Shown in pieces: positions 1 through 44,782 of a stretch of DNA of 64,000 nt. Source of the stretch: Zygnema circumcarinatum SAG 698-1b (lineage: Eukaryota; Plantae; Zygnematophyceae); assembly GCA_037447605.1 (NCBI GenBank), contig CM074817.1, positions 1,426,001-1,490,000 on the forward strand, given 5' to 3'. Under the pieces are notes generated by a model. That model was not told the DNA's origin and searched no databases. It worked only from the letters and a program-made list of their open reading frames with translations. Position 1 is the stretch's first letter; each line of letters begins with the position of its first letter. The position numbers and the translations under genes are program-made.

Positions 1-1740
1 CAAGCTGTGCTCTTAGCCACGGATGGAAGACTGTTCGCTCGTCTCACATTTGCTCCCAAGGCAAGGCACATGTGCATCCCTGCCATGGCATGGCATGGCA
101 TGGGGGGGGAGACCCGCATCCCCACATCCGCTACCATGAGCTGATTTTGTGAGTTCTCTCTCGTGAACAGCACGGAGACCAATTGGCTGAAGCTGAAGCT
201 GAGGCTGAAGCTGGGAGCGTGGTGGTCAAGGAAGACTATGTTCTGCGTTGCTGGGAAAGCATTTATCTGAAAGGAGGACCTTACCAGGGTCAAGGGCTAC
301 GCTGATTTGTGTGACAAGTTTGAGAATCATGTTGGTTTCTATGTTGAATGGAAGGTCCATGGTTGATTGGTGGGGGCAGGTTGATCCAAACTTCGTTGGC
401 ACCTTCATTTTGCCATTACGTGCGGTGGATGAAATTTGTCGTGCATTTGGGGGAGTTCCGAAAGCAGCTTCCAAAAGGGCGCAAGAGGCTGCAAGGCAGC
501 TGGATGAACAGGAGGTGACGGTTGAACTTCAGCGAGAGAGAGTTGCAATTCATCTCCTTGACGGGTGGGAATAGTGACCCTTCAAAATTGGATCCAATTG
601 GGGAACAGAGTTTTGTCAGTCGGCACTGTTGAAAAAAGGTCCTGTCTATTGTGGTTTGGACCAGTAAGTGAATGATTAACTTTGCGGGTAATTCGAGGTA
701 ATCTGAAAGGCTGACTCAGTTACTGCTCTTTGTTGACTGTTCTTTGCTCTGCTTCGTTCAACGGTGTTGTGTCAGACAGTACAACCTTGGGAAGCCAATT
801 GTTGATTGGCGACTATCCCGACCTTTCCCCCTTGATGAATAGAGAGCCCAAGGTGAGAATGGGTGGAGGACCACATGTATAGCTATCCTCCTTGAAGCTA
901 CGTCGCACAAATTAGCTTTTTTTTTGTACTTCATGTTTTCACCTTTTAATTGTGTCATGGCCTTATCTAAACGTCATCCAACACGCGCTTGAGAACCGAG
1001 TGCAGGTGACCTTGAGTTTAGACCGACAAGAGCTTATTTCACATTTACGCAAAGTGGCACTCTTTTGTGGGAAATCGAGTGACAAAAGCGCTAAGGGCGT
1101 GCATATGGCTCTTCGTTCGAGTGTGCTTTCATTGAGTGTCTCCAGCTCTCATGCAGGCGAATACCAGGTAAGCCTTCACCACTTATTAAATATAGCATTG
1201 AATTTGAACCCCGAGACTCTGAGAGTTTCTGTTCCTCATTTCCACTAGCACCTTGAGCAAACGATCACTAATCTTCCTATATCGGGTAACATCTTTACAG
1301 CAACTGAAAAAGATTCAATGGGAAAGATTGTCTTGTAGAGTTTCAAGTTCATACAACGTACTTTCTTAATCGGATGTGCAGGCATTCATGGAGGTCGAAT
1401 ATGATGGAGCGCCAATGGATATTGGCTTCAATCCCCTTCTATTGGCGGACATCCTGCAGCATGTAGATGGAGGTAAGGAAACCTCGCTAACTAAAGACTA
1501 CCTTGTAGTGGAGTATAGTCAAGTCAAGTTTATTCTAAATCACGTCACTGACGCGGTTCACTGGTGCCTGAGAGCATTTTTTTTAAGAGTATTTTTTAAT
1601 TGGGACCTAACGCAGTCTCGTCTGAAACAGACATAGTCAGTTTGGGCCTTACAAGGCATGGAGGGAGCGGCACAGCTATCATTCGCGATGATGTGGCTAC
1701 TTTTATTCTTGGGGGGCTCGTGGATCCGGCGGATCCCTGA
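1..1740 (+). CDS. dnaN: Bacterial-type DNA polymerase III beta subunit (sliding clamp, DnaN) homolog, intron-containing, 5'-truncated by the window edge
   Basis: Reconstructed exons: <1-60 (QAVLLATDGRLFARLTFAPK), ~380-564, 780-852, 1006-1167, 1382-1472, 1616-1740 (stop TGA). Exons from 380 onward total 636 nt in one frame with compatible GT-AG phases. Motifs match beta-clamp domains II-III: LATDGRLFA (E. coli VATDGHRLA), FILPLRAVDEI (VIVPRKGVIEL), GSQLLIGDYPD (TSKLVDGRFPD), EVEYDGAPMDIGFNPLLLADIL (DVTYSGAEMEIGFNVSYVLDVL). The exon 1/2 junction is uncertain, and an extra exon may start at 171. Confidence 0.85.
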
Positions 1741-2468
1741 GTGCAAGTAAGGAGGAAGGTAATTAGGAAGGTGCTCTTAGGGTACGACCATGGGTTGACT
1801 TTTGTGGGACTGAGGGGCTTTGAGGGTCTCAATCGTTGTATTTGACTTTAAGCCTGAAACTTCACGTTCTGCTCTCTTATGTGATGGTTCGATGTATGAC
1901 GTCGCCCCACATTGACCTGCAATAAACGCAGTTCTATGCCTTCTCCGTCCTACTTTGGTGTTAGAACCATCGGGAATAATTCCTTTCTCTGCAATTTTGC
2001 GACACTGTTTTTATAAAGAATCCATGGGTGGGTTTCATTAATGACAGAGTGTCTCGTTGCTTTGCAGCTTGAATGCTGCTTGTTGTCGTGGGCTTAGCTG
2101 TGCCTGCGCGTTGTTCATCTTTAAGCTTAAACGCCACGACTGCCTGCTACTGCTCTGTCCTCCCAAGAAGAAGTAGACGCATTGGTCTTAGGGGCAAGCC
2201 ACTGCATAAGCGTAACTCCTTTGTTCAGAAATCGAGCCATCTAAGCCCATCTGTACAGCGCTTGGCATTGCATTCTGCAGAGTACATGAAAAGAACACTT
2301 GCGACTCAAACATGATGGCTTTACAAACACCATAAAGACCATCAATGCTCCCAACCATGCCATTGAGAAACTCCCTTGAAAGAAAATGTGAGGAAATATC
2401 GAGAACTCCCATTAATGGACAGTACTTAAAAAGAGTATTCTTGTGTGGGGTCTAGAGTCAGGATATAA

Positions 2469-11297: not shown

Positions 11298-12139
11298 AAA
11301 TTTCGGAGAACTATATACCGCCCCCTTTTTTGGTTATCCCGCCATCGTTTTTTTGAAATCCGACCCTCCCATTTCGGCTATTCTGCCCCCCTCCCCCATT
11401 TTGGATATTTCGGGAGGAGATCGCCCCCCTGATTTGAATATTTCTTTCCCGCCCCTCCCGTCCTCTCCCCTCCCCTTCCCTGCCCTCCCATCCCGTCCTC
11501 TCCCCTCCCCTCCCCTGCCCTCCCCCTCCCCTCCCCCTCCCCTTCCCTGCCCTCCCCTCCCNNNNNNNNNNTCCCCTCCCCTTCCCTGCCCTCCCCTCCC
11601 GTCCTCTCCCCTCCCCTCCCCTTCCCTCCCCTGCCCTCCCCTGCCCACCCCTCCCTTCCCTTCTTCCTCTCGGTTTGCAATTTCCACACAAATGACTGAG
11701 TATAAGACTCGCGATGAGCTTGTACAAGAAAAAGACATAAGAAGAATCCTTCCTTCTTGCACTACAAGAAGGAAGGATTTCACATCAAGATCGGCAAGCA
11801 TAGCGATAGCCGCCGACTCTACCTGCAATGCTTTAGCCGGGGGACCTACGAGGACAGAGGTCTGGAAGAGAGTAGTAAGAAGAGGAATATCTCTCCTCTG
11901 CTCTCTCTCCTCTAGTCTTTCTCTCCTCTACTCTCTCTCCTCTGCTCATTCTCTCTCTCTCCTTTGCTCTCTCCTGTGCTCTCTCCTCTAGTCTCTCTCT
12001 CCTTTGCTCTCACTCCTCTACTCACTCTCTCTTCCTCTCATCTCTCTCTCTCCCCTCTTTACTCTCTCCCCTTCTCTCTCCTCTACTCATTCTCTCTCTC
12101 TCTCTCCTTTGCTCTCCCCTCTAGTCTCTCTCTCCTTTG

Positions 12140-12545: not shown

Positions 12546-13183
12546 CTCGCTTCCGAACGGTTGAAGTTCAACAAGTTAAGTTTAGTTTAAAAACTTCGTT
12601 GCGGGGATGAAAAAAACACTTTTCGCCTCAGTTTCCACCTCCAGAGCTTGTTTGTAGCAGTCAAGGAAAGTCGGCCCATGAAAGCGCACCCCGAGGCCAA
12701 GCACGAGCAGCAGGCGGGCAGCCAACCCGCCGCGACGCGAAGGGAAGGGCGGGAGGGGCAGCGACCGCCCGCCGGCTGGTCGCTCGTCTGTTACAGTTCG
12801 CGTCCAGTTCGGTGGCGGTCGACCGGCGGAGCTGCTGTTCGCTGTTGGCAGTTTGTGGCAACGACTCGCAAGGAACGGAACGCCCCGGCACGGAACGGGT
12901 CTCCTCTGCCCTGAGGACAGCCCTCAGGGGCTTTCATTATTCTGGAAAGCCCGATGTCCGTCGACTTTGCTCCAGGACATGCCACGTGTTGCCTGTACGG
13001 TAGATAATGTGCCGCGGCATGTGCTCACACCAAAGCGGAAAGTTCACTTGGATCGTTTCTCACACAAGAACTGGTATCATTTGAAATTCCGGCTGGTTGC
13101 AAAAAGGACGGCAAAGGGAGCGAGACGATAGGCGGAGGAGAGGGGGGGTGGAGGGAGAGGAAATAGGNNNNNNNNNNACTCTG

Positions 13184-14074: not shown

Positions 14075-14894
14075 CGAAAAGAACAGCAAAGGCGAATCCC
14101 CGGCGAGAAAAGAGGCTGAGGGGGAGGAGAGGGATGGGGAGGGGAGAGATGGGGGGAGAGTGGCAGTAGNNNNNNNNNNNNNNNNNNNNNNNNNNNNNNN
14201 NNNNNNNNNNNNNNNNNNNNNNNNNNNNNNNNNNNNNNNNNNNNNNNNNNNNNNNNNNNNNNNNNNNNNTACAGTATTTCGGGGTTATATCGTGCTCGAG
14301 GATAGGGTACAGGTACAGGCCTGTACCATTGGTCGGCAATGTGTTGGCACCCGTTGGCTAGCAGACCAAGCCATCTGGTTCGCCAATGGTTGGCCAGTTA
14401 ATGAAATCGAGCTAGCGCTGTGCAGTAGCTGTTGCTGTATACAACGTCAATTACAGTGCAGAACTGGTATTGTGAATAGGAGGGGATCTCAGACTTGGAA
14501 AACCGATATGGAATTGACTTTTGGAACATAAGTACTTCAAATTGCTAACTTTATTTGCTTCGTTGTTGCTAGTTTGCGAAAAGTGTGTACCATACTGAAT
14601 TTTAATTCCTTTTGCCCGTGCATTTGATGGCGTCACCGCATGCCCGTTCAGATCTATGTGGGGCCTTCAACACAATTTACAAAATTCACGCAGGTATTCT
14701 GTGAAAAAGGACAAACAATTCATTTGAATTGAGCAATTTAGAATAGAAAAACAGGTTTACAGTTCGTGACAATGTCGCTGGGAAGCAAACTAGGTAATTA
14801 TGAACTACTTTCGAGGGCTCTACGTCCAATTTTCCGGTGCTTAAATCGGTTGAAGACAGTAGGATCAAACAATTCCAACAACATAAAAGAAAGT

Positions 14895-15433
14895 AACGCA
14901 AACTTTCATTGAACTCGCGATGGCGAGGCCATCAAATTTACATGGATAAAGGCAAAATGTGGAACCACGAAGGACTGGTCACAAAGGACCGAAACACAAT
15001 AAAACGAAGCTAGGAGCGGAAAACTACGCCTAGGCACAACAACGCAGCCCTAGAAGCAGCCGCGAAGGTCACCGATGTGAGGCACGTCGCGAGGAGGGAG
15101 CGGCGGAAGTCCACCAACACGGTCACCAACAACTGCAGCACGCCGAAGTAGCGTAGAAGCGAGNNNNNNNNNNACGCTACTTCGGCGTGCTGCAGTTGTT
15201 GGTGACCGTGTTGGTGGACTTCCGCCGCTCCCTCCTCGCGACGTGCCTCACATCGGTGACCTTCGCGGCTGCTTCTAGGGCTGCGTTGTTGTGCCTAGGC
15301 GTAGTTTTCCGCTCCTAGCTTCGTTTTATTGTGTTTCGGTCCTTTGTGACCAGTCCTTCGTGGTTCCACATTTTGCCTTTATCCATGTAAATTTGATGGC
15401 CTCGCCATCGCGAGTTCAATGAAAGTTTGCGTT
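14895..15433. repeat. 260-bp inverted repeat (14895-15154 / 15174-15433) centred on a 10-N gap
   Basis: The arms read as reverse complements of each other from AACGCAAACTTTC to AGTAGCGT. Confidence 0.85.
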
Positions 15434-15816: not shown

Positions 15817-18800
15817 ATGCGCTTGCTAACGCTCGCAACATGCAACCTGAACCAATGGGCCATGGACTTCCAAGGAAACCTGCTGAGGATCAAAGAGTCC
15901 ATAAGGACGGCCAAGCAGGAAGGAGCCAGCTACCGAGTGGGGCCCGAGCTTGAGATTACTGGCTATGGCTGCGAAGATCATTTTCATGAGCAGGACACCT
16001 GTCATCATGCGTAAGCAATTCTCCCAGCATTACTTTCCGTCATGTTCTCTTTGATAATTTCTTGTTCTGTGTCCACACTTTATGCACGTCTCCCCGTTCG
16101 ATAGAACTCCTGGTTTTTATTTCTTTTCAGTTTTTCGTTGACCTTTTTGAGGCTTATGACTTTGAAAGAAGCTTGCTTGATTTACCCTGCCTTCACAATA
16201 AAGCACTGTAATAGTTTGATTAGAGCCAAGAAAATTAAGGCTAAAGTTTTACTTATACCGAGAGCGTAGCTTTTCCGCATTCATCTAGCTTTGAGTCACA
16301 GTTGTTACAAGCAACGAGCAGCCAATTCTGCAATGAAAAAGCGCACGAAAGCACACACATTTTTGGAGATTACTAAATTTGAAATCCGATTTCCTTTCAG
16401 AATAGACCATTTCATTTCGGTTTATCATGAAAGAATGCAATAAGAATGGATTCTGAAAAAGAAAATAGTCAATATTTTGCTATATGCTTCAGCTGTAAGA
16501 CTGCAAGTGAAAAAGTACCATCACAATGCAAGCGGTGAACACCTTGCACAGTTGGTCGACCAAATGATGCACACATGACAGTAAACTCCAGTTTTTTTGT
16601 GATTGTCAACTCCAAGAAGTCCTAAACAGCATACTTGGGTAACACCATCGCAAAAGACATAAGAAAGCAAGTCTGCAGCTCAAATGCTCCAATAAGCCAT
16701 TGAAAAGGGGGTATGAAGGCTTCAACTTCTGACCGTCTTCAAATCTTGCACGTCACATTCTATTTATACCCGATTTCTACGACTTCGTGCTGACTTTTAT
16801 CTCGTCAGTGCAGGTGGGAATGCCTGGCTGATATATTGGCCTCGGATTTGACAGACGACATTGTATGTGATATTGGTCTGCCTGTGGAGCATAGAGGCAT
16901 AAGATACAATTGTCGAGCCTTTTGCCTTAATCGCCGCATCCTTCTCATTCGGCCAAAGATGGATTTAGCCAATGATGGCAATTACAGAGAGACACGGTGG
17001 TTTGCAGCATGGCAACGAAGTCGACAGGTGGAGGAGCGTCGCCTGCCGAAGATTATCAGCGATGTTGCAGGACAACAAACAGTTCCATTTGGAGATGCAT
17101 ATTTAGAATTCGAGGATACGTGCGTTTCTGCACCGTGGAAGGACTCTGTTACGGGTATCTAAGTGACTCAGTAGAAGGGATTTTGGCCTGGCCTTTGCAA
17201 ATTGAACAATGATCGGATAACTTTTATGTGATTCATTTGGAAAGCATCAGAAGACGAGACGTAATTTTTTATTAGTTTTGAATAGCAGGATCAGTCCGAG
17301 GTGGATGTGAGTTACGATACTTACTGAGAGCTGTTGATCCTGGCTAAAATAAGACATATCTAGTTCCTCAGTCCGTGCAAGGAGTAGAGTTGCTTACACA
17401 AAAATAAGCGAAAATTTCAAACGATTTATTCAACTATTAAGCTATACAGGGTGTATAAGTTTTCATGAGTCTAATGGCAGTACAGAATACCGTAAATGGG
17501 ATACTGCTTGTAATAGTACGGGGAAGATAGTTTTTGAGGTCTTTTGGTGTGGAAACGGGGAAGTGACTTTGGGGAAGAGCAAGAGGAGGGAGTAGGACGA
17601 GAGCGTAAGGGTAGAGAAAACGAGATTTAGACTGGAATGCTAGAAGGGTTGGATTGGTGGAAGTCAGACTGCGGCGTAATAGCAAGGGAGATCAGGAAGG
17701 GTTGGAAGGTAGCACTCCCTCACTGCATCTCTATATTTTGTCTTGCAGAAGCTTAGCAGCTGAGACTTGTGAGGAGCTCTTTACTCCAGCCTCTCCCCAC
17801 ATTAGCCTTGCTCTGAATGGAATTGAGGTCGTCAGCAATGGCAGTGGGTCTCATCATCAACTCCGCAAGCTCAATACTCGCCTGAATCTAATGAAGGAAG
17901 CGACAGTTAAAGCTGGTGGTATCTACGTGTATGCCAATCAGAAGGGCTGTGATGGTGGCCGACTTTACTATGGTAAAGACATCCGTCACTACCTTCATGT
18001 CCCAGCTGTTACCCTGATTTGCAACAACTATGTTTTGTCGTTCGATTCCACCTTGGCTCGACTTTAGAAGCAATGTGTGCACTTTTATTGAGAGGAACTC
18101 AAGAATCCGGCTCAAGCAAGCTTCTAAGACTCGTCGTCAAGATTTTTTCATGATTCGTGCACTTGTTTTGCAGTGAATAATTCATCTAAGAGGATTGTAC
18201 TCTTCTGTGTAACGAAGAAAAAAGCTTGACCAAGCTCCATGTCTGCTTTTATTTCTATCTGTAGTGAGAATATTGGGGCCTTTTTGGGTACATTTCAGAT
18301 GGCTGTGCGGCGGTCGTGGTTAACGGAGATGTTGTTGCGCAAGGTTCGCAGTTTTCGATGTCAGATGTTGAAGTTGTGACAGCGACAGTGGACCTTGATA
18401 CGGTAGGCGGCTATTTCTGAACTTCAACTTCAAATATGGATGAATGATATGTCTTTGCAAAGGTGGATCTGTGCTTCTATACCTTGTTCGCAAGCAGCAG
18501 GTAACAACTGTTCTGGTTGGTTGGAAAGCTCTTGTCTTTTTAGGGTCTTTTATGCTTCCATGACGACATGACACTATCGAGAATCACTTTTTTCTGAAGC
18601 ATCCTTTTGCATTCTGTAGGTTGCTAGTTATCGTGGAGCAAACAGCAGTATGCGAGAGCAAGCGACGAGAGAGCCGCGAATACCATCAGTTTTTGTCTCA
18701 TTCCGTCTCACATCCTCCACCGACGGGCTTAAGAAGTTCCCGTCACTCCCTGTTCAGGTAATCTAACCTTACTTTCTTAACCACCCGAAAGTGAGGAAGA

Positions 18801-21800
18801 CAACGAAACATTACTCTGCTCACTAGCATGCAGTGCTGCTCATTATCGTACCGTCGAGTTTTTCGAGTTTCAAAGTCAAACCATACTGTTTCCTGTCTAT
18901 GCTGCTCAAGGTCCTAAATAGTTCTACTACAAAGCAAAAGTCTAAGTATACTGAGAAGTCATTCAAACAGATTCGTTACCATGTTCCCGAGGAAGAGATC
19001 GCTATGGGGCCGGCCTGTTGGCTGTGGGATTATCTTCGTCGGAGTGGTGCATCCGGATTCCTATTACCGTTATCAGGGGGAGCTGACAGTTCATCTGTTG
19101 CTGCTATAGTAGGCTGCATGAGTCAGCTTGTAATAAAAGGTGCTCATCGATCTCTGCTTCCTCCAGCCTTTCGTAGTTTCCATGCATGTCACACTTTAAG
19201 CGTCCATACTTCTAAAAATTCGGGAGCATTAGTAATGCTGTTGGAAATTCTGATAGCTCGTCTAAAAACAACAGTATAGGTATGCTCATCTTTTCTCTTT
19301 CATGAGTTGTCTTCACTTGAAATCGAGGCTTTGAGCCAAATATTTACGAACATTTGAGGTTGAATTTCAGCAATTTCCGACGGCAATCAAGATGTTTTGA
19401 AGGACGCCCTTCGCATTGGTCAATATCAAGACGGCGAGCAGCCTGCAGATGCGCAGGAGTTTGCGAGCCGAATACTGCACACTGTCTATATGGGCACGGA
19501 GAACAGGTTTGTGGTGAATCTGTGTTGTGTGTTCAATGAAGTCCTAACTTGAATAATTTCACATACTGTAAGCATTCAGAATAAACCTTATTGGAGCTGG
19601 ACCTTTTTTTTCCAAAGCCTGCTACTATCTCAAGAGGACGTATAAAGTGGTTTTGAAATTTCTACCGTTCGTCATTTGCCCCCCCATGCATGTTGAGCAG
19701 CTCTGCAGAAACTCGGAAAAGGTCTGCAAATCTTGCCGGGCAAATAGGAGCATCACATCTGGACATAAGTATCGATTCTGTTGTGTCAGCTCTTATCGGA
19801 TTGTTCAAATTGGTCACTGGGAAGCGTCCCATGTATAAGGTCAGTACAGCACCTACACGCCTTTACCAAAAACTGGATGTAGATATCAGGCTTCTCTCTC
19901 CCCTCTCTCGCTCTCTCTCTCTCTCTCATTCTCCCTTGCTTTTTATCTCATCTCTTTATCCGGTTTTGGTAATTTGAATAGTGCGAATCCACAGCTCAAA
20001 CTCGTTTTAAGCCTTTCGTGTAATAACTTGCTGTTGACTCGTCAAATGTGTGCTATTCTCTGTAATTGGCAACTTCCAAGTAGACAACCTTGCCTGTATG
20101 CGTTCCTTCCTCTTTGGTCCAATTTCCCAACCTTGCTTGCAGTTTCTCCGCACTCTAGGCTCTTTTCTCATGTAGGCTTTGGGTCTGCTCCGGCTGATTT
20201 TTCTCAAGCATGTCATCTTTGGGAGAACGTTTCAGTGTGTACCAGCGGTAGCTCAGCAATCATATGCGATTTATATGCGATTTCCATTTTTGCACGTCAT
20301 TGGATGCAGGTTTCTTCTAACCTGTTCTCAAACTGCTACCATTGCAAGACAAATCAAACACTTATCTCGTATATTTGTGGGCCTATCTATCTTCTGCAGG
20401 TTGATGGAGGCACCTCTGGAGAAAACCTTGCCCTCCAAAACATTCAAGCACGTCTGCGGATGGTGATTGCTTTCCTATTTGCACAGTTGCTACCATGGGT
20501 CCGAGGAAAGGCGGGCTTCTTACTTGTTTTGGGAAGTGCGAATGTGGATGAAGGGCTGAGAGGCTACTTAACAAAGGTCTGCTCTTTTTCTGTTGCCACT
20601 TTCTTTTCCCTTTCTAGTCATTCTGCTTCACAGATTGCGCTTTTGGGTTTCCTTTCTTCTGTCAGTTTATCGCCGAGAAAGTTGTGACTGACTCAGTCTA
20701 GGGTAGGTAGTTTGAATGCTTATCACTTTCAGCTCACTAAGTTGCTGAGATTTGCTGTTGCAGTACGACTGCAGTTCAGCAGACATAAATCCAATTGGAG
20801 GCATCAGTAAACAAGATTTGAGGGCCTTCTTGAGATGGGGAGCGGTGCATCTCGGCTTCTCAGTTTTAGCTGACGTGGAGGTTGCTCCTCCAACAGCAGA
20901 GTTGGAACCAATCAGAGCCAACTATGTACAGGTATTGTTCTACTCTAGTCATTTCGTCTCCTACTGGCTTCTTATCCCCGCTTCAACTATTGTTTCCCCA
21001 TTGTCGCCATCAAGGAGTGTGTATTGTGACAGAAATGTATTGCATGAACACATCATAGTCTGCAGACGCAAAACAAAACGAAAAATGCCAAACTGTCGAG
21101 ATATCTTAAGTCACCCTAATATATAAATATCTTGTAGTTTGTAGAATGTATGGGAAACTTGAACTTGAGCTTGAGCTTTTGTCATATTTAATCTATTTCA
21201 GGTGGATGAAGTGGACATGGGAATGACATATGAGGAGCTTTCACTTTATGGCCGACTCCGCAAAATATACCACTGTGGGCCAGTCTCTATGTTCCAGGCA
21301 GGCTGCCTTTCCTTGAACATCACCCCTAGTAACAACACCTTCAGACAAGCTATTCATTCGCTTGCTCTTCTCTTGAAACAAGCTTGCTGATAGAATATGC
21401 TTTCTGCTGTAGAGACTTTGACGTACTTTTTAAAAAAACTAGTATTCTCGCGAACTGCATGTGAGAAGAATGAGCAGTAGAGCTGACTCTGTCTCTCCAA
21501 AAAGTCATCCGTTCAAAGCAACAGCGCCGATGGCTTGTCTCATCTTGTTTCATATTTCACTACTACTAACCGATTGATGCATGCTATGAGTCAGGTTGTG
21601 GTTCTGGAAACAGTTCCTTGGGTCATTCGAGTACGAGGCTCACATCTTTCAAGCTTCCCAAGTTTCAATTTTTTTTCTTTGTTGTGCAGCATTTATGTCA
21701 CAGGTGGCAAGGAAAGTACAGTCCCGCGGAAGTCGCCAAAAAGGTGAAAGACTTCTTTAGGTACTACTCCATTAATCGCCACAAGATGACGACGTTGACA

Positions 21801-23064: not shown

Positions 23065-26000
23065 TCAGGACCAAATGTCCCTGATATAGCGCTTGTCACT
23101 CGTCATGACAGCGAGGTAAGAAACCGCCAAACTCTCCGTCATGTTACCGTGCTCCGCCATGATGGACAGCAGGGTGGCATGCACGTCCTTTGCCATGTGG
23201 GCGCCATCTCTGGAAGGAGGAAACGAGACGAGAAGACGGGAGAGAGGGAGGGGGAGGGAGGGAGAAAGAGAGAGAAGAGGAGAAAGTTTTAGGGGAGGAA
23301 GGGGGAGAGAGAGAGGAGAAGAGAGAGAAAGAGAAAGAGAGAAAGAAAGAGGAGGAAAGGAAGTTTAGTCATCAGCTGACAGAAGGCTTTCTTTGGCTTG
23401 ATTTAGAACCGATGGCGTGTCCTAAGGCCTCACAGCCGTAGAAAGCAACTGACTAATCCAACTACACGAAACTATCCTTCGATAAAAGACAACTTTACAA
23501 GAGACTGGAGATTGCTTGCTTTCCATGTATCTAAGAAATGTGAAGAGGACAAAACCATTCTGAAGGAGTCTACTAATTGTGAGTGTGGTACATCAGGATC
23601 AAACAGGACGAGCCATAGATCTATTATCAACATACAACATGATCAAGTGCTTATTTTTTAACGGCCTCCAAACATGACCGGATAGCACACTCGAATGCCG
23701 GACAGAAACTTACCCGCAGACAAAGATATAGGCTTGAGGATGACGTAGTAACGAATACACCTCAGAGCCGTACTCCTTCAACTTATGCTGAACATAAACC
23801 TGCCAAGTCCAATGGTCCAAACAAAGGGAGTTCAGCTTCGTTTTCACTCTGTCATAGTTATACTGCTCCATCAGATGACTCAGCCCGGTACCATCCTGCT
23901 TGGTCGTAGCACCTTCTCGACTACCACTTTTTCCATTTGATGGCTTTGTGAGGTTAAAAGACCCTACGAGGCTAAAAACACATATGTAATTCACAAGAGG
24001 ATTGTAGGGATCATAGCTGATTCTAGAATATCGAGGGATGACTATGCAATATCCAAAACTGCACTACTCCCTTCTAAATGAAGCTACTCAGTTTCCTTCA
24101 CGAAGTCTGAAGATCTGCACTATAAAGTTCATTCAGTTCGAGCATTTCAAGAAAGAAAATTCACCTTCTCCGTCTGCGCTCGGGAAAATGCCACCACCAT
24201 TTTCGTCAGTGTCTTGTCTGCCTCGAAGGCTTCAAAATCTTCTCTGAAAAGGTAATCTTCATCCTCACGCCGGCACCCAAAAAACAGCCATGCGTCCGCA
24301 CCCTCCCTTAAACCCCCCTCTCCTCTCTCCCGCAGAAGAGCTCTCCTTTCCTGAAGAAAACCTCTAAAGGGACAGACTCCTGTTCCTGGGCCGATCATAA
24401 TCAAAGGGCTGTCTAAACTTGGAGGAGGATGAAATTCACCACCCCCCTTGTGAAAGACAGGAAGCTGGACAGGAACACTTGTTGGGACCCATTCTCTGTT
24501 GGGTCCTATCGCTAAGCATCTCTCCATCCAGTTTGTTGCCACCCCCTGAAACAGTCGGTCCTTTGGCATCTTTACCTTCACTACACTAAAAGCAACTTGT
24601 ATGTGGTTTGGGTCGACAGCTGGTGAGTTTGTGATGGAATAGAAGCGAGCCACTAGGGGTGGTAGGGTATCCAACAGATGTGCTAAATCTGGGTTGCAAG
24701 ATGGATAACTGAGAAGAAGGTCAAGCAGACCAGGTCGCTCATCCTGAATGTTGGTCTTGTAGGCATCTTTGCCCCCTCGACTAGACAAAAATAGCAACTT
24801 GGTCTTTTCCTTGTGATCTAAACAGTATTCCGCCAAAACACGGAGTAGCCCCTTTCTGGGAACAGCTGTGATATCAACATAATGCAGCAATGCTTGTCGT
24901 AATGTGCATGGCTGTTTGATATGGCTCAGAGCTTCTACTCCCCCATCCTCGTCATCTAAGGGGTGAATACGAAATCTTCGATTTTCATCCACACTTAGCC
25001 TTTGCATCAACTTGTCCACGATTTCTGTATCGTTTTGAGGAACTACCCCTATGGAGTCTCCTGGTCTAAACTTTATCCCACTTCCACTGATGTCCACTTC
25101 CAAGTCAATCACCACTCTATCAGACCAAGAAGCTGTCAGATACTTTGCCCTGCTGACAGGGGCATGGAAAGGAAGAGAAGCCGAATGGAACAACTCACTT
25201 TCCTGGTTTCCATCTGATTTCCCATTAGCCGTGTTCACATGAAATGCAGGCTGAATTTCACCTTCTACCCAATCTTGGAGTTTTACTCTACAAGGTTGCA
25301 GTGCAGGGACTCCAACGAGCTCAACTTCTTCCTCTTTCGCCCCTCCATCGGACTCTATAGTAACATTGTCAGCAATGCTTAATGGCTCGGCTGCAAGAGC
25401 TTCTTTTAAAGGCTCCCAGATGCCGGAAAACCACGCGTCTACAATATCCTCCAGTCTGCCCCAAACAGCAACCATTGTTCAATTAGCAATTCCTACCGGC
25501 TGATGCTTCTATTCTCTAGGTAATAGAACGAGTATGCTCTTCCAAATTGGAAGAAGGAGCTGAGAGAGGCGAACTCACCCGTCTACCTCATCTGCTTCAC
25601 AGCATTTATAGAAGCAGCGAGCTCCGAGCTCCGGAAGCCGCGTAGTGAAGACACGTGGCACCTGCATGAAGCGAGTGTAGTTCGAGTCTCCCAATCCTGT
25701 TCACCGCCCATACAAGGAAAAGCTTCAGCAATTATACCAATTATACAGTGAAGGACGAGAAACTAAAACTTAAAGGAGAGAGTTTAGTAGCTGACGGTCA
25801 AGAAATGTTCAATCTTATAGATAGGCCACACACCAAGGCGAAGAGCATAGGCCATATGGTCATATCTCCATTACAACTATATATACTTATATTGAACGGA
25901 CGAGAGAGAGGACTTAAAGTAGCCCTGAGAGGATGTGCAGTTCGAGTTCATGCTGAAATCACAGGATTGCATCAAAAATACTGATTCTCTGCAACCACTA

Positions 26001-28022
26001 GTTCTACGCAGCCTCTCAGGCGAGTTGAAGAGAGGGCGAATGCCCAATCCAGAGAATAACTGGCTGCTTTGTATAATCATTAAGTAAATTCAAGGAAAAC
26101 AAAGATGTTGTAAACATTCCTAGTAGCACTCGCTGCACGCCATAAACACTCCTCTATTCAGTTTTGCGGGTTCATTTAAATTAATGGACTTAATAAGAAA
26201 ATCGCACACTTTCAAGCTCTTTCGCCAAACTTGAACTAGTCCTTCTTGAATTACTTGAAGCAATGAACCAGTTTCTGAAGAGGAGGTATACTGGTTTTAA
26301 AAAATAGCTGCTCCAAGCAAATGAACGCACGCCCATGACCTTAGCAATGAATGAAAGTAATGTAGGAACTACGACTAACCTCATCGTCTCCTTCTGCCAA
26401 CTCTCCATTTTAATCTAATTTCGAGTCCCCTCTAAAAAGGCTCAATCAGTTGTCACAGCAGGGTGTTCCCTAAGGCTGAAACAAAATGGTCCACGCGCAC
26501 TCTCCCTACGACTCTCCCTTTCTCCCTCCTGCTATCTCTATGAATCTCCCTATCCAAGACTATGGAAACCTGGCTCCTAACAATGACAATCTGTTTATTT
26601 GTGATGGTTGTAACTCTTACCGCAGACTGTGTATTGCAGGCCTGAAAGCATAGTAGACGAATGAGTCCTATACCGAATAGTATTGAAGAATGTCTGACAG
26701 TTTTCAGGAGGATCACCATCACCAGTGCTGGAGACAACAAAAATAGCAACGCCAACACTCGGCAGTTTGCTCTGCACATGCAGAAGGTCAAATCATCATG
26801 CCAAACACATCATTGGCCTGCAAACAAAGAAAAGTCATGCGGCCAAAACTCTTCCCGTTTATTGTAGTACTTGTACGATGCAACACGACACCAGGTGTAA
26901 TGCCCACTTCAATTTAACAAACTGGGTTCTAAACAATCAGCAATAATCAGCAAACACCTTCACGTACTCGGGCCTGGGAAGATAATATAAGGATAATTGG
27001 GCGTATGCGATGAGAAACGTCTTGTAAGCTCGAGCAGTCTTAAGCACGAGAAAGTTGCTTACAAAGGGAAAATCGTTCATGGCGTACACTTTGGAAGGGA
27101 TCCCATGAGAGGCAGCTTCTGCGTTGATGTCCTTTGCTATTTCCATGGCGCATCCAAGTTGTGACCCATACAGTACAACTACCTCTGTAAGCGACAGACA
27201 ACCAAAAAACAGTAAGTGACTGTAAGTGACAGGGACAGTAAGTGTATGGGAGTGTGGTTTCCTTGGCGAGTGATAACACTTCAGTGTTGAGGGTAGTTTC
27301 TGTTTAGTAAAATTAGTAGTTTCTCTTTGGTGCAATAGATTTATTGCGCAATTTCTTGAATCGCTCAATTAAACTCTTCTGATTCTCTCCAAAAACTTAC
27401 TTTTTTTGTAATCAATATCACCTGAAGGGTTCCCTCTCGGCAAGCTTGAAAGCTGAGTACCTTTTGGTTGGCTCTTCTGTGCAGCCTTGGCACTCATTGC
27501 TGCTGCCATTGCTCGAGCCCCGGGGGAGACTCCCTGAGCGTCAATATATCGAGAAGGAGCGTCCTCAACAACACTCATTGAGTCGTTCCCTGCTACAGGC
27601 TTTGAGGAAGATGCTTGATTGGCTGGAGTGATAGGCGCTGCAGCTGTGAGAGCAGCTGCAGGAGGACTCAGAGCAGCAGACTGCACAAGTACTGTTTTTT
27701 CTGAATCTAAAGCTCGCACTTGCTGATCCTCTTTGTGTGCACTGAAAGATTGTTGGTGATTTGAATTGGTTTTGGTTTGGCTGTTCGGATTCTCTCCATA
27801 CAAGTAGAAGTAAACGAGCACAGGCCCTCCAATCAAAGCAGCCCTGAATAGAAAGGGAAAATAGAGGTACAAAAGGAGGCCAAGTCCTAGCAGACCCGGA
27901 CTCAGATAGGCGAGAAACAGCCTCCCCCTCAACTCAGTCGAAGGCATTTCTCTGCCTCTCAAAAGGGCGCAAGCAGGGCTCCTCCCTCCACCTACCGCCG
28001 CCAGGAAAGCACTGACACACAC
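23065..28022 (-). CDS. MTRR: Methionine synthase reductase (diflavin NADPH reductase, MTRR type); start codon uncertain
   Basis: FMN domain: [45 protein letters not shown]...ELGA...[23 protein letters not shown] domain: [41 protein letters not shown]...YIFVCG, C-terminal YIRDIWS* (stop at 23065). The flavodoxin-linker motif and DIWS ending fit MTRR better than CPR or NDOR1. Confidence 0.8.
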
Positions 28023-42623: not shown

Positions 42624-43315
42624 TTTTCAACTTTGGGATACAGTAGCTCTGACGACAGGACAGGGCAGTACAGTACCTGGTACTGCAGGCTACTACTCAC
42701 TGACCAGCTAAACATTTTCTAACTGCCCAAAATCGCCAGATCCCACGTGTCGTGCCGTGAGTAGTTGATGAAATTTTCAGGACAGCTGCCTGAAAGAAGC
42801 GAAGTGGTACGGTAAATGGCATGACCAGATCCATCTGCACCCGTGCTCTGGCTCGCCAGAAACCCACCAGATTTCAACGTAAGGTTGCACAATACGGTCC
42901 GTACCATACGGTAGTCATGAATCACGGTGCAACCTGCCACTACGTGTATTACTGGAAAACGCTACATAGAACAACAGAACTGGTCGAATCTCAGTTTCTC
43001 ACATGGAACATGCCACACCTTTAGCCACGTGGCAGAGCTCGCTGGAAGAGCCACCCCGTCAGCATTGCCACGTGGCAGGCCCCCAGTGATCCTGAAAGCT
43101 CGCCACCGACATTCAAATGTACGGATGTGCTTGGGGCTCTTCATTCCTTGTCAGCGGCTGCGCGCGTCCGCAGCCGTCCGATCCGCTCGAGGGGGCGTTC
43201 TCAGCCGTTGGATTGGCGGTCCATTGCGGTCCTGGGGAGTCAAGATCCGTGCCGCCGACTGACTGTGGCGAGCCTCCGAGGGTCCAACACTGCACGAGCG
43301 CACTTGCAGGCGCAT

Positions 43316-43753
43316 GGAGGGAGGGAGAGAGGGAGGGAGAGAGGGAGGGAGGGAGGGAGAGGAGGGAGAGAGGGAGGGAGAGGAGGGAGAGGAGGGAGAG
43401 GAGGGGACGGAGATAGGGAGGAAAGCAGGGGAGGGAGAGAGGGAGGGAGTGAAGGAGGGGAGGGAGAAGAGGGAAGGGAGAGAAGGAGGAAAGGAGGAGG
43501 GGACGGAGAGAGGGAGGGAGAGGAGGGAGAGGAGGGGACGGAGATATGGAGGCAAGGAGGAGGGGAGGGAGATAGGGAGGGAGAGAGGGAGGGAGTGAAG
43601 GAGGAGAGGGAGAGGAGGGAAGGGAGAGAAGGTGGAAAGGAGGGGAGGGAGAGAGGGAGGGAGAGAAGGAGGGAGAGAAGGAGGGAGAGAAGGAGGAGGG
43701 GAGGGAGGAGGGAAGGAGGGAAGGAGGGAGGTAAGGAGAGGGGGGAAGGAGAG
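43316..43753 (+). repeat. ~440-bp purine (GGA/GAGG) tract immediately upstream of the lipase ATG
   Basis: Almost pure G/A with internal direct repeats (GAGGGGACGGAGA x3). Confidence 0.9.
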
Positions 43754-44782
43754 ATGGATGTGGTGGCGCTTGCAGCCATGGGCAGCGCCACGGGGGCGTG
43801 TCTGGCCTGGCAGGGGAGGAGGCTCCTGCGGGAGGGCGCGCAGGACAGCAAAGGATGGCCGCCGGCGCCACCGCAGGACCTGGATGACCTGCTCCACTAC
43901 GCCCGCCTCGTGCAGGTTGGCGCTCGCCCGTCTTTGCAGTGTATCTTCTCGCACAAGTTCAATTTTCTGTATTTATAAAATCAGCAAACGCTAGCAGTTA
44001 CAATGAGTTTTTTTTTAGGCAAAAGAAATTCCTCTACGATAAGGTAGATGATTGAGTCGATGATTTCAAGTTTACCTGAAACTTCATAGTTTTAAACAGG
44101 TTGAACAGAAATGAGAGCACCATCCTGAAGTTACAGGGACATAAATGCAAGTAAAAGGAAACAAAAAATAAAACCTACTTGCGATCGTTTAGAAGTTTAG
44201 TAAAAAGATGATAATTATCATTCAAGGACAAAAGGAGATTTTAAGAGATGGTGGCCAAAAATATCTTTGAGAAACCGAAAGAAATTGATATTTTAGAGAA
44301 TGGAAATAAGGAATTGACTCGTTCTCAAGGATGAATAGTTGGGGTAACATGGGGATAGCTCTTATGCTTTTCACTTTCTACTAAAATACAACAGATGATA
44401 TGGTCTGTCGGGGAAGGTGAAGTCAACCACGACCTTACTGAAGGTTCCCCCGACTCGAATTCAAATTTCTTCACATTCACCAGTTTGTCTCGTTCGCGTC
44501 ATTAAAGAGAAAAATTGCACAATTGCTTACTGTACTTTGCAGGGAGCGTATGAGCGTACTTTAGACAGACTCGCAGAGCGTGTTCCTTACATGGACGTGA
44601 ATGACGTTGTAGAGTTCAGTAATCATCCGGAGGGGAGTTCAGAAGAAGCGATGTGTCCACCTCACTTCATTTACTCCGATCATCGACGGCGGGAAGTGGT
44701 TGTTGGCATCCGTGGAATGCGTCTTGGCTGTCCAACAGGTGTAGCCAGGGCGTGTACCTCCCCTTTGTGCGTATGTAAGAGT

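What the first reader, a model, noticed from the sequence alone, without database searches (positions are those of the whole stretch)
1..1740. Bacterial beta sliding clamp (DnaN) homolog encoded as a spliced nuclear plant/algal gene
Seen: six exons with phase-compatible splice sites and a CTAAC branch point before the last exon. They give a protein collinear with E. coli DnaN domains II-III (ATDG, LPLRAV, GDYPD, YDGAPMDIGFN...DIL). It sits next to clearly plant genes. Established: eukaryotic nuclei use PCNA and 9-1-1, plant organellar DNA polymerases (Pol I-like POPs) have no well-characterised clamp, and plants keep DnaX (clamp-loader gamma/tau)-like proteins such as STICHEL. Inference: this is a domesticated bacterial clamp (horizontal or endosymbiotic transfer). 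It may serve an undescribed organellar replication/repair clamp system or be a partner of DnaX-like proteins. The ORF track hides it because it is split into small exons.
Basis: partly seen in the sequence, partly recalled or inferred. Interest (0 to 1): 0.9.

Follow-up and report, generated by a model that had tools for sequence, protein, structure and literature searches.

The report
Bacterial DNA clamp gene in alga
The window starts inside a real, spliced and expressed nuclear gene of a streptophyte green alga that encodes a very divergent bacterial-type DNA sliding clamp (DnaN), the one subunit of the bacterial replicase that a 2026 survey reported as missing from all green and red algae.

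Summary
Observation confirmed. Window 1-1740 (+) holds six phase-compatible exons (1-60, 380-564, 780-852, 1006-1167, 1382-1472, 1631-1740). All five junctions appear in RNA contigs of four public runs of the same organism.

The 226-aa product is collinear with DnaN domains II-III (31 bits against E. coli DnaN, pairwise E 1e-11). Its only close relative in 1.8 billion representatives is a 521-aa protein from another alga's mRNA (60% identical, dN/dS 0.11). That protein passes the Pfam cut-offs of all three DnaN domains and folds as a beta-clamp protomer (TM 0.93). It carries a disordered, Ser/Thr-rich 118-aa N-terminal extension.

The family is strongly derived:
- It is 21-27% identical to every bacterial clamp sampled.
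- It has a 16-aa insert in domain II.
- The C-terminal M-P-x-R pocket motif is lost.
- It scores below NCBIfam's DnaN equivalog cut-off.

Its donor lineage is unresolved.

A May 2026 preprint reports nuclear Pol III alpha and tau/gamma genes in Archaeplastida but says beta is confined to cryptophytes and Paulinella. Its screening threshold would have missed this protein.

Most likely this is an organelle-targeted (probably plastid) clamp for the alga's own Pol III alpha. That function is inferred, not shown. This is a new member of a newly known kind.

The parts
1..60 (+). Coding exon, open at the window edge. Encodes QAVLLATDGRLFARLTFAPK, the TDG(R)L strand of clamp domain II. The gene continues upstream of the window.
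   Evidence: Frame and splice phase. RNA contigs run over the window start by 238-455 nt. Aligns to residues 296-315 of ortholog P0121.
61..379 (+). Intron of the in-frame form, GC..AG type (AAG|GCAAGG ... GGGCAG|G).
   Evidence: Joint 60/380 is present in RNA contigs of X1, X2 and X7.
61..148 (+). Alternative extension of the first exon (GT donor at 149). It carries an in-frame TGA at 142-144 and also closes the frame of the next exon, so this splice form is unproductive or truncating.
   Evidence: Joint 148/380 is present in all four runs, at assembler depth equal to or above the in-frame joint. Frames read.
380..564 (+). Coding exon: rest of domain II, including the family-specific 16-aa insert (VPKAASKRAQEAARQL).
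   Evidence: 67% identical to P0121 residues 316-376. The insert is absent from all 29 bacterial and phage DnaN rows aligned.
565..779 (+). Intron (GT..AG). A minor alternative acceptor at 775/776 is seen in one run and shifts the frame.
780..852 (+). Coding exon: inter-domain connector with the GDYPD motif (E. coli G-R-F-P242-D-Y).
853..1005 (+). Intron (GT..AG).
1006..1167 (+). Coding exon: first half of domain III (DRQELISHLRK...).
1168..1381 (+). Intron (GT..AG).
1382..1472 (+). Coding exon: domain III core (MEVEYDGAPMDIGFNPLLLADILQHVDG).
   Evidence: PF02768 E 0.008 for this exon alone. 80% identical to P0121.
1473..1630 (+). Intron (GT..AG) with CTAAC at 1607-1611. The branch A lies 20 nt before the acceptor.
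1631..1740 (+). Last coding exon, with stop TGA at 1738-1740. The C-terminus reads ...ATFILGGLVDPADP and lacks the bacterial (V/L)-M-P-x-(R/K) motif.
1741..1825 (+). 3' untranslated region. The shorter RNA contigs end at 1816-1825. Longer contigs of two runs continue to at least 2400.

Best explanation
Window 1-1740 is the 3' half (domains II-III) of a nuclear, spliceosomal-intron-bearing gene of a streptophyte green alga. It encodes a highly diverged homolog of the bacterial beta sliding clamp DnaN.

Shown:
- The gene is real, transcribed and correctly spliced.
- Selection conserves it between two algae.
- Its full-length ortholog has the complete three-domain clamp protomer fold behind a long disordered N-terminal extension.

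Inferred:
- The extension is an organelle (most likely plastid) transit peptide.
- After import the protein forms a head-to-tail homodimeric ring, and a DnaX-type loader places it on organellar DNA.
- The ring tethers the alga's own nuclear-encoded, cyanobacterial-type DNA polymerase III alpha for processive copying of the plastid genome.
- The altered C-terminus and the domain II insert mean that the partner-binding pocket has co-evolved with those partners.

Origin: an ancient transfer from a bacterium, predating the split of the two algae. A cyanobacterial (endosymbiotic) source is the parsimonious guess, but it is not demonstrated.
For: - Exon structure and frame.
- Splice joints in four RNA runs, 100% identical.
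- Spliced peptide against E. coli DnaN 203-342: 31 bits, E 1e-11 per comparison. Against Bacteroidales DnaN: 42.6 bits.
- Full HMMER scan of 1.84 billion representatives with exon 2 returns a single hit, P0121, at E 5e-18 and 67% identity.
- P0121 comes from a monocistronic mRNA with UTRs and a stop upstream of its ATG.
- 60% identity over 226 aa. dN 0.28, dS 2.5, ratio 0.11.
- P0121 Pfam scores are 34.7, 37.5 and 49.5 bits for PF00712, PF02767 and PF02768, all above the cut-offs.
- AlphaFold: residues 119-516 mostly confident, 1-118 below pLDDT 50.
- Foldseek: the 50 best hits are all beta clamps. The best has TM by target 0.93 and rmsd 2.1 A.
- The first 40 residues of P0121 hold 14 Ser/Thr, 2 acidic and 2 basic residues.
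- T172, D173, G174, P242, N320 and S346 (E. coli numbering, pocket list from memory) are kept.
- Partner context, alpha and loader: preprint 10.64898/2026.05.23.727376 reports plastid-targeted Pol III alpha and tau/gamma genes in nuclear genomes of non-chlorophyte green algae.
- Partner context, this genome: unchecked scan notes say it has a 24-exon DnaE gene with a clamp-binding-type motif, and a STICHEL-like gene.
Against: - The window lacks the N-terminus and no targeting predictor was available, so localisation is inferred from the ortholog only.
- The C-terminal (V/L)-M-P-x-(R/K) segment lines the partner-binding pocket in bacterial clamps. Here it is replaced by L-G/A-G-L-V-D plus four residues.
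- H175-R176-L177 reads R-L-F.
- P0121 scores 123.3 bits on TIGR00663, under the equivalog cut-off of 137.65, and matches only profile positions 2-341 of 367.
- In three of four runs the junction that leads to a premature stop has assembler depth equal to or higher than the productive one.
- No loader delta/delta' subunits are known in this lineage.
- Cyanobacterial ancestry is not supported by any data here. The pair sits on a 3.1 substitutions/site stem in an unresolved position, and the tree holds no chromosomal cyanobacterial clamp.
- Plant organellar polymerases (POPs) are processive without accessory factors (PMC4166229), so a clamp is not obviously needed.
Confidence: 0.55

Rival explanations
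1. The clamp is real and organellar but has been rewired. It no longer serves Pol III alpha. Instead it acts as a platform for other organellar DNA enzymes (Pol I-like POP, MutS/MutL-type repair, ligase or recombination factors), possibly in mitochondria rather than plastids.
For: - The canonical C-terminal pocket motif is lost, pocket residues are changed, and domain II has a new 16-aa helical insert.
- The score falls below the equivalog cut-off.
- The long stem branch points to a period of fast change, such as a change of partners.
- Bacterial clamps bind many partners, for example in clamp-MutL complexes among the fold hits.
Against: - Preprint 10.64898/2026.05.23.727376 and unchecked scan notes say this lineage keeps a Pol III alpha, and the notes say that gene has a clamp-binding-type motif.
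- No accessory protein of POP has been identified (PMC4166229).
- The Ser-rich, nearly uncharged start of the ortholog looks more plastid-like than mitochondrial.
Confidence: 0.22
2. The gene is a decaying or non-ring relic. It is transcribed, but much of the transcript is spliced unproductively, and the protein can no longer form a working clamp.
For: - The premature-stop splice form (donor at 148/149) is as deep as or deeper than the productive one in three of four runs.
- The C-terminal motif is lost.
- The scores against the family models are weak.
Against: - The 226-codon frame is intact.
- dN/dS is 0.11 over a divergence at which silent sites are saturated.
- The ortholog is full length and has a confident complete clamp fold.
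- The productive joint is present in three runs.
- Assembler depth is a poor measure of isoform ratios.
Confidence: 0.08
3. Origin rival, independent of function: the gene came by horizontal transfer from a non-cyanobacterial bacterium or a phage, not from the plastid ancestor. The alga's replisome would then be a chimera of a cyanobacterial alpha and a foreign beta.
For: - The best tblastn and phmmer scores go to Azospirillum (103 bits), Bacteroides (99 bits) and two unlabelled metagenome clamps (88 and 84 bits).
- Cyanobacterial plasmid-borne paralogs and a Nodularia phage clamp score only 54-63 bits.
- An FNGSFILP word is shared with Bacteroidales clamps.
- Scan notes mention Bacteroidota-like DNA scraps in this genome (unchecked).
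Against: - The score differences are small at 21-27% identity.
- The word-based searches biased which bacteria were sampled.
- The tree leaves the position open (82/73 support) and warns of long-branch attraction.
- No chromosomal cyanobacterial, cryptophyte or Paulinella clamp could be fetched, so the cyanobacterial hypothesis was never tested.
Confidence: 0.35
4. Bacterial contamination or a mis-joined contig end.
For: The gene lies at the very start of the window, and the assembly has gaps elsewhere.
Against: - Five spliceosomal introns are removed in RNA of four independent studies.
- RNA contigs continue from exon 6 into downstream window sequence up to position 2400.
- The ortholog is a eukaryotic-style mRNA.
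- No bacterial clamp is more than 28% identical.
Confidence: 0.01

Closest known systems
Nuclear-encoded, plastid-targeted DNA polymerase III beta of Pyrenomonadales cryptophytes (Teleaulax, Guillardia relatives), from preprint 10.64898/2026.05.23.727376
   Same: A bacterial DnaN clamp encoded in a eukaryotic nucleus with an N-terminal targeting extension, in a lineage that also keeps Pol III alpha.
   Different: - The cryptophyte proteins passed a PF00712 E<=1e-20 screen and nest in Cyanobacteria near Gloeomargarita.
- The algal protein scores only E 2e-8 on PF00712.
- It has lost the C-terminal motif, has a domain II insert, and its ancestry is unresolved.
- It sits in a primary-plastid green lineage, where the preprint reported beta absent.
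- No cryptophyte sequence was available here for direct comparison.
Bacterial beta sliding clamp DnaN (E. coli b3701; TIGR00663; PF00712, PF02767 and PF02768)
   Same: - Collinear three-domain protomer.
- Same fold (TM 0.93).
- Conserved T-D-G strand, G-x-(F/Y)-P-D connector and I-G-F-N strand.
   Different: - 21-27% identity.
- Below the equivalog cut-off.
- 16-aa insert in domain II, and no (V/L)-M-P-x-(R/K) C-terminus.
- 118-aa N-terminal extension in the ortholog.
- Split by spliceosomal introns.
Nuclear Pol III alpha and tau/gamma genes of Archaeplastida (same preprint; scan note s1-350927 for this genome)
   Same: The same kind of relic: a bacterial replisome subunit kept as an intron-rich nuclear gene of a streptophyte alga. 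Presumed functional partners.
   Different: A different subunit. Alpha and tau/gamma are reported as clearly cyanobacterial, while beta here is too diverged to place.
PCNA and the 9-1-1 clamp, the eukaryotic nuclear clamps
   Same: The same processivity-fold superfamily and the same ring principle.
   Different: PCNA is a trimer of two-domain protomers. The sequence and fold searches here returned only bacterial-type three-domain clamps.

Membership tests
Bacterial beta sliding clamp (DnaN), Pfam definition | Three consecutive domains, PF00712, PF02767 and PF02768, each above its gathering score | tested here: met
   Ortholog P0121 scores 34.7/24.4, 37.5/27 and 49.5/27 bits. The window holds only part of domain II and domain III. 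Its single exons are not significant alone, but the spliced peptide is 60% identical to P0121 and scores 31-43 bits against bacterial DnaN.
Bacterial beta sliding clamp (DnaN), NCBIfam equivalog TIGR00663 | Whole-protein score at or above the curated equivalog cut-off (137.65 bits) | tested here: not met
   P0121 scores 123.3 bits at E 1e-35 and matches profile positions 2-341 of 367. A Bacteroidales control scores 226 bits.
Bacterial beta sliding clamp (DnaN) | Half-ring protomer fold of three topologically alike domains | tested here: met
   The AlphaFold model of P0121 is mostly confident over residues 119-516. The 50 best PDB matches are all beta clamps; the best is 6ams_B with TM 0.93 and rmsd 2.1 A. 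The window's own protein was not modelled.
Bacterial beta sliding clamp (DnaN) | Partner-binding pocket between domains II and III, including the C-terminal (V/L)-M-P-x-(R/K) segment (residue list from memory of E. coli structures) | tested here: not met
   T172, D173, G174, P242, N320 and S346 are kept. H175-R176-L177 reads R-L-F, and the C-terminal motif is replaced in both algal proteins. The M-P core of the C-terminal motif is present in 22 of 29 bacterial and phage rows.
Bacterial beta sliding clamp (DnaN) | Head-to-tail homodimer ring that is loaded on primed DNA by a DnaX-complex loader and raises polymerase processivity | not testable with these tools
   Only monomer prediction was available, and no biochemistry.
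Plastid Pol III machinery of photosynthetic eukaryotes (preprint 10.64898/2026.05.23.727376) | Cyanobacterial ancestry of the subunit | tested here: inconclusive
   ML tree of 31 rows: the algal pair is 100/100 monophyletic, sits on a stem of 3.1 substitutions/site, and its position is unresolved. No chromosomal cyanobacterial or cryptophyte clamp could be fetched.
Plastid Pol III machinery of photosynthetic eukaryotes | N-terminal plastid transit peptide | tested here: inconclusive
   The ortholog has a 118-aa disordered extension that is Ser/Thr-rich and poor in charge over its first 40 residues, and there is an in-frame stop upstream of its ATG. No targeting predictor was available. The N-terminus of the window's gene lies outside the window.
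Plastid Pol III machinery of photosynthetic eukaryotes | Co-occurrence with Pol III alpha and a clamp loader in the same genome | not tested
   Known only from unchecked scan notes (s1-350927, s1-350986, s1-397104) and from the preprint's statement for non-chlorophyte green algae.

The most novel reading that the evidence does not exclude
This streptophyte alga is the first member of the Archaeplastida shown to keep the sliding clamp together with the polymerase (alpha) and a DnaX-type loader of the bacterial replicase. That would make a working Pol III-type replisome in a primary green plastid, with a clamp whose partner-binding pocket has been remodelled. The clamp may even be of non-cyanobacterial origin, which would make the replisome a chimera.
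Probability: 0.4. Interest if true: 0.8.

Novelty: new member of a known kind. Interest (0 to 1): 0.64.

Why it matters
Textbooks and reviews hold that plastids of plants and algae replaced the bacterial Pol III holoenzyme with single-subunit Pol I-like POP enzymes that need no accessory factor (PMC4166229).

A May 2026 preprint overturned part of this by finding nuclear Pol III alpha and tau/gamma genes in some red and green algae. It stated that no Archaeplastida lineage has all the subunits, and that beta survives only in one cryptophyte order and in Paulinella.

A transcribed, selectively conserved beta clamp in a streptophyte alga fills exactly that gap. It means a processive bacterial-type replisome in a green plastid can now be tested directly by reconstitution, localisation and knockout.

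It also shows that stringent profile thresholds hide fast-evolving organellar relics. And it offers a natural experiment in how a clamp's binding pocket co-evolves with a reduced set of partners.

Tried and rejected
- **Single exons against Pfam, NCBIfam and the PDB.** They are too short. Only exon 5 gave a weak DnaN hit, and the other hits were chance coiled-coil matches to the insert.
- **Word-indexed protein searches with P0121 and with a mixed alignment.** Only four bacterial clamps came back, probably because low-complexity N-terminal words filled the candidate list. These results say little about how widely the family is distributed.
- **Genome scan with a four-sequence alignment.** The three-sequence version used Bacteroidales-specific patterns and so returned only gut Bacteroidales. 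I reject reading this as evidence of a Bacteroidota donor.
- **Metagenome scans.** The scan with P0121 found nothing. The scan with exon 5 motifs found 14 uninterrupted bacterial clamps and no further eukaryotic copy.
- **tblastn against plasmids and phages.** There is no close donor. The phage hits are no better than the bacterial ones, so a phage origin has no support.
- **ML tree.** It is uninformative about the donor.
- **Organism of SRR8128902-08.** It could not be identified from the literature.
- **PCNA/9-1-1 kinship and contamination.** Both were considered and rejected.
- **Typing the spliced peptide into the search tools.** I avoided this. All work on the spliced peptide was done in the sandbox.
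Full report
**What is in the sequence.**
Translating the first 1.8 kb in three frames shows clamp-like peptides scattered over frames 1 and 2. With canonical splice sites they join into one open frame of 226 codons. The exons are 1-60, 380-564, 780-852, 1006-1167, 1382-1472 and 1631-1740, and the stop is TGA at 1738-1740.

The first intron of this form is GC..AG, with the strong GC-type donor AAG|GCAAGG. A CTAAC lies with its branch A 20 nt before the last acceptor. The frame is open at position 1, so the gene begins upstream of the window.

**Is it transcribed and spliced as proposed?**
One look-up found ten runs of one organism (coded organism A) that hold this stretch. I laid the contigs of four runs from four studies on positions 1-2400.
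- All laid pieces were at least 99% identical to the window.
- The joints 564/780, 852/1006, 1167/1382 and 1472/1631 are each carried by contigs in all four runs. Single contigs span exons 2 to 6.
- Contigs overrun the window start by up to 455 nt.
- In two runs contigs continue from exon 6 to position 2400. This ties the gene physically to the downstream window sequence.

At the first intron there are two forms.
- The in-frame 60/380 joint occurs in three runs.
- A 148/380 joint (GT..AG) occurs in all four runs, at equal or higher assembler depth.

The extension 61-148 has a TGA at 142-144 in the coding frame. It also closes the frame needed for exon 2. That form is therefore unproductive or truncating. 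The tool warns that contig word depth is a poor measure of abundance, so I draw no ratio from it.

**Is it a DnaN?**
Single exons are too short to decide. Only exon 5 touches PF02768 (E 0.008) and TIGR00663 (E 0.14). PDB searches with exons 2 and 4 gave only chance hits.

The spliced peptide, handled in the sandbox, gives clearer results.
- It aligns collinearly with E. coli DnaN residues 203-342 at 31 bits (per-comparison E 1e-11).
- It scores up to 42.6 bits against other bacterial clamps.

A full HMMER scan of 1.84 billion cluster representatives with exon 2 returned exactly one protein, P0121 (521 aa, E 5e-18, 67% identical over the exon). P0121 is encoded on six about 2-kb RNA contigs of runs SRR8128902-08. 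These are monocistronic, have 5' and 3' UTRs, and have an in-frame stop upstream of the ATG.

The window's peptide is 60% identical to the C-terminal 226 residues of P0121 without a gap. Over these codons dN is 0.28, dS is 2.5 (saturated) and the ratio is 0.11. This indicates purifying selection across a deep split.

P0121 itself meets the sequence and fold definitions of the family.
- It passes the Pfam gathering cut-offs of all three clamp domains.
- Its AlphaFold model is mostly confident over residues 119-516, while residues 1-118 are below pLDDT 50.
- The 50 best Foldseek matches in the PDB are all bacterial beta clamps. The best is Pseudomonas 6ams_B, with TM by target 0.93 and rmsd 2.1 A.
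- A sequence search of the PDB returns 53 sequences, all beta clamps or clamp fusions.

No PCNA-type or Rad9-type hit appeared anywhere.

**How unusual is this clamp?**
It is far from every bacterial clamp I could reach.
- It is 21-28% identical to gut Bacteroidales, Azospirillum, enterobacteria, Actinomycetota, plasmid-borne cyanobacterial paralogs, phage clamps and 12 metagenomic clamps.
- On NCBIfam's DnaN equivalog model it scores 123.3 bits, under the 137.65 cut-off, and matches only profile positions 2-341 of 367.

Two derived characters are shared by the two algal proteins and by none of the 29 bacterial or phage rows aligned. One is a 16-residue insert in domain II, modelled as a helix. 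The other is a new C-terminus.
- The C-terminal (V/L)-M-P-x-(R/K) segment is replaced by L-G/A-G-L-V-D plus four residues.
- In E. coli that segment contributes to the partner-binding pocket. This rests on my recollection of the published structures.
- Other pocket positions are kept: T172, D173, G174, P242, N320 and S346.

**Where does it come from?**
In an ML tree (LG+C20+F+G4, 31 rows) the two algal sequences are sisters (100/100). They sit on a stem of 3.1 substitutions per site, and its attachment is unresolved. The program flags long-branch attraction to the Bacteroidales group.

The sample of bacteria was dictated by word-based and motif-based searches. The cyanobacterial hypothesis was therefore not tested, and the donor remains open. 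Higher raw scores to Azospirillum and Bacteroides than to cyanobacterial plasmid paralogs are weak hints at best.

**Which organism?**
Names are coded. The neighbouring genes are intron-bearing eukaryotic genes. The large exon of a methionine-synthase-reductase-like gene has its best named hits in Klebsormidium nitens (50%) and Spirogloea muscicola (51%), ahead of chlorophytes at 38-44%. Earlier unchecked notes of this scan call the genome a streptophyte, in one note a zygnematophyte, alga. I could not name the organism of P0121.

**What is known?**
Moriyama and Sato's 2014 review of organellar replication enzymes lists neither Pol III nor a clamp for plants and algae. It notes that POP polymerases are processive without accessory proteins (PMC4166229).

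- It reports plastid-targeted Pol III alpha and tau/gamma genes in nuclear genomes of red algae and non-chlorophyte green algae.
- It states that no Archaeplastida lineage with all the subunits was found.

Its beta screen required PF00712 at E<=1e-20. P0121 reaches only 2e-8, so this family would have been missed. Three further literature searches found no report of dnaN in streptophyte algae.

Within this scan, notes on other pieces of the same genome describe a 24-exon nuclear DnaE gene, a clamp-binding-type motif in it said to 'predict a nuclear-encoded DnaN', and a STICHEL-like (DnaX-like) gene. I did not check these.

**Most likely mechanism.**
- Shown: the gene is real, spliced, expressed and conserved, and its ortholog has a complete clamp protomer fold behind a disordered Ser/Thr-rich leader.
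- Inferred: import into an organelle, most likely the plastid; dimerisation into a ring; loading by a DnaX-type complex; tethering of the alga's Pol III alpha.

The remodelled C-terminus argues that the partner interface has changed. This fits either co-evolution with a reduced partner set or a switch of partners. The abundant premature-stop splice form may reflect regulated unproductive splicing or mere noise.

**Verdict.**
The general phenomenon was published six months before this scan. The specific subunit in this lineage was reported absent there. I therefore class this as a new member of a known kind, of good but not top interest.

Noticed in passing
window 61-148 (alternative donor at 148/149) and 776 (alternative acceptor): A second splice form keeps 88 nt after exon 1. 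It carries an in-frame TGA at 142-144 and is present in all four RNA runs at assembler depth equal to or above the productive GC..AG form. A minor frame-shifting acceptor at 776 appears in one run, and low-depth contigs retain introns 1 and 5. This may be regulated unproductive splicing.
   Followed up: partly
window about 2468-2548: A degenerate array of plant-type telomere-like repeats (TTTAGG/TTTAGGG variants) lies about 730 nt downstream of the stop codon, inside the stretch covered by the long RNA contigs of two runs.
   Followed up: no
window 24147-27368 (- strand): Exons of a diflavin reductase annotated in relatives as methionine synthase reductase. The best named hits are Klebsormidium at 50% and Spirogloea at 51%. 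No protein with 100% identity is in the 5.8-billion-cluster collection, so this organism's annotation seems absent from the public protein sets.
   Followed up: partly
window 17654-20687 (+ strand): A split glutamine-dependent NAD synthetase gene, with CN_hydrolase and NAD_synthase pieces in separate exons.
   Followed up: partly
window 43100-43980 and 48690-49870: Two very GC-rich low-complexity tracts (GC 63-68%). They read as Pro/Ser/Leu-rich on one strand and Gly/Arg/Glu-rich on the other. The second continues a GT61-like gene region, so it may be an extensin-like or hydroxyproline-rich domain.
   Followed up: no
window 11562-11571, 13168-13177, 14170-14269, 15164-15173: Runs of N (assembly gaps) in a region of skewed composition, so the local assembly there is not continuous.
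   Followed up: no
L034 1413-2570 and L037 99-1328 (JGI metagenome contigs): Two closely related, uninterrupted bacterial DnaN genes of unknown taxon are the best-scoring bacterial clamps against the algal protein (88 and 84 bits, about 24% identity). They keep the normal V-V-M-P-M-K-F C-terminus.
   Followed up: partly
L041-L043 (Nostoc and Scytonema plasmids): Conjugative plasmids of Nostocales carry a conserved, longer (about 457 aa) DnaN paralog next to a DUF5895 gene. The three copies cluster on a long stem (1.6 substitutions/site) in the tree.
   Followed up: no
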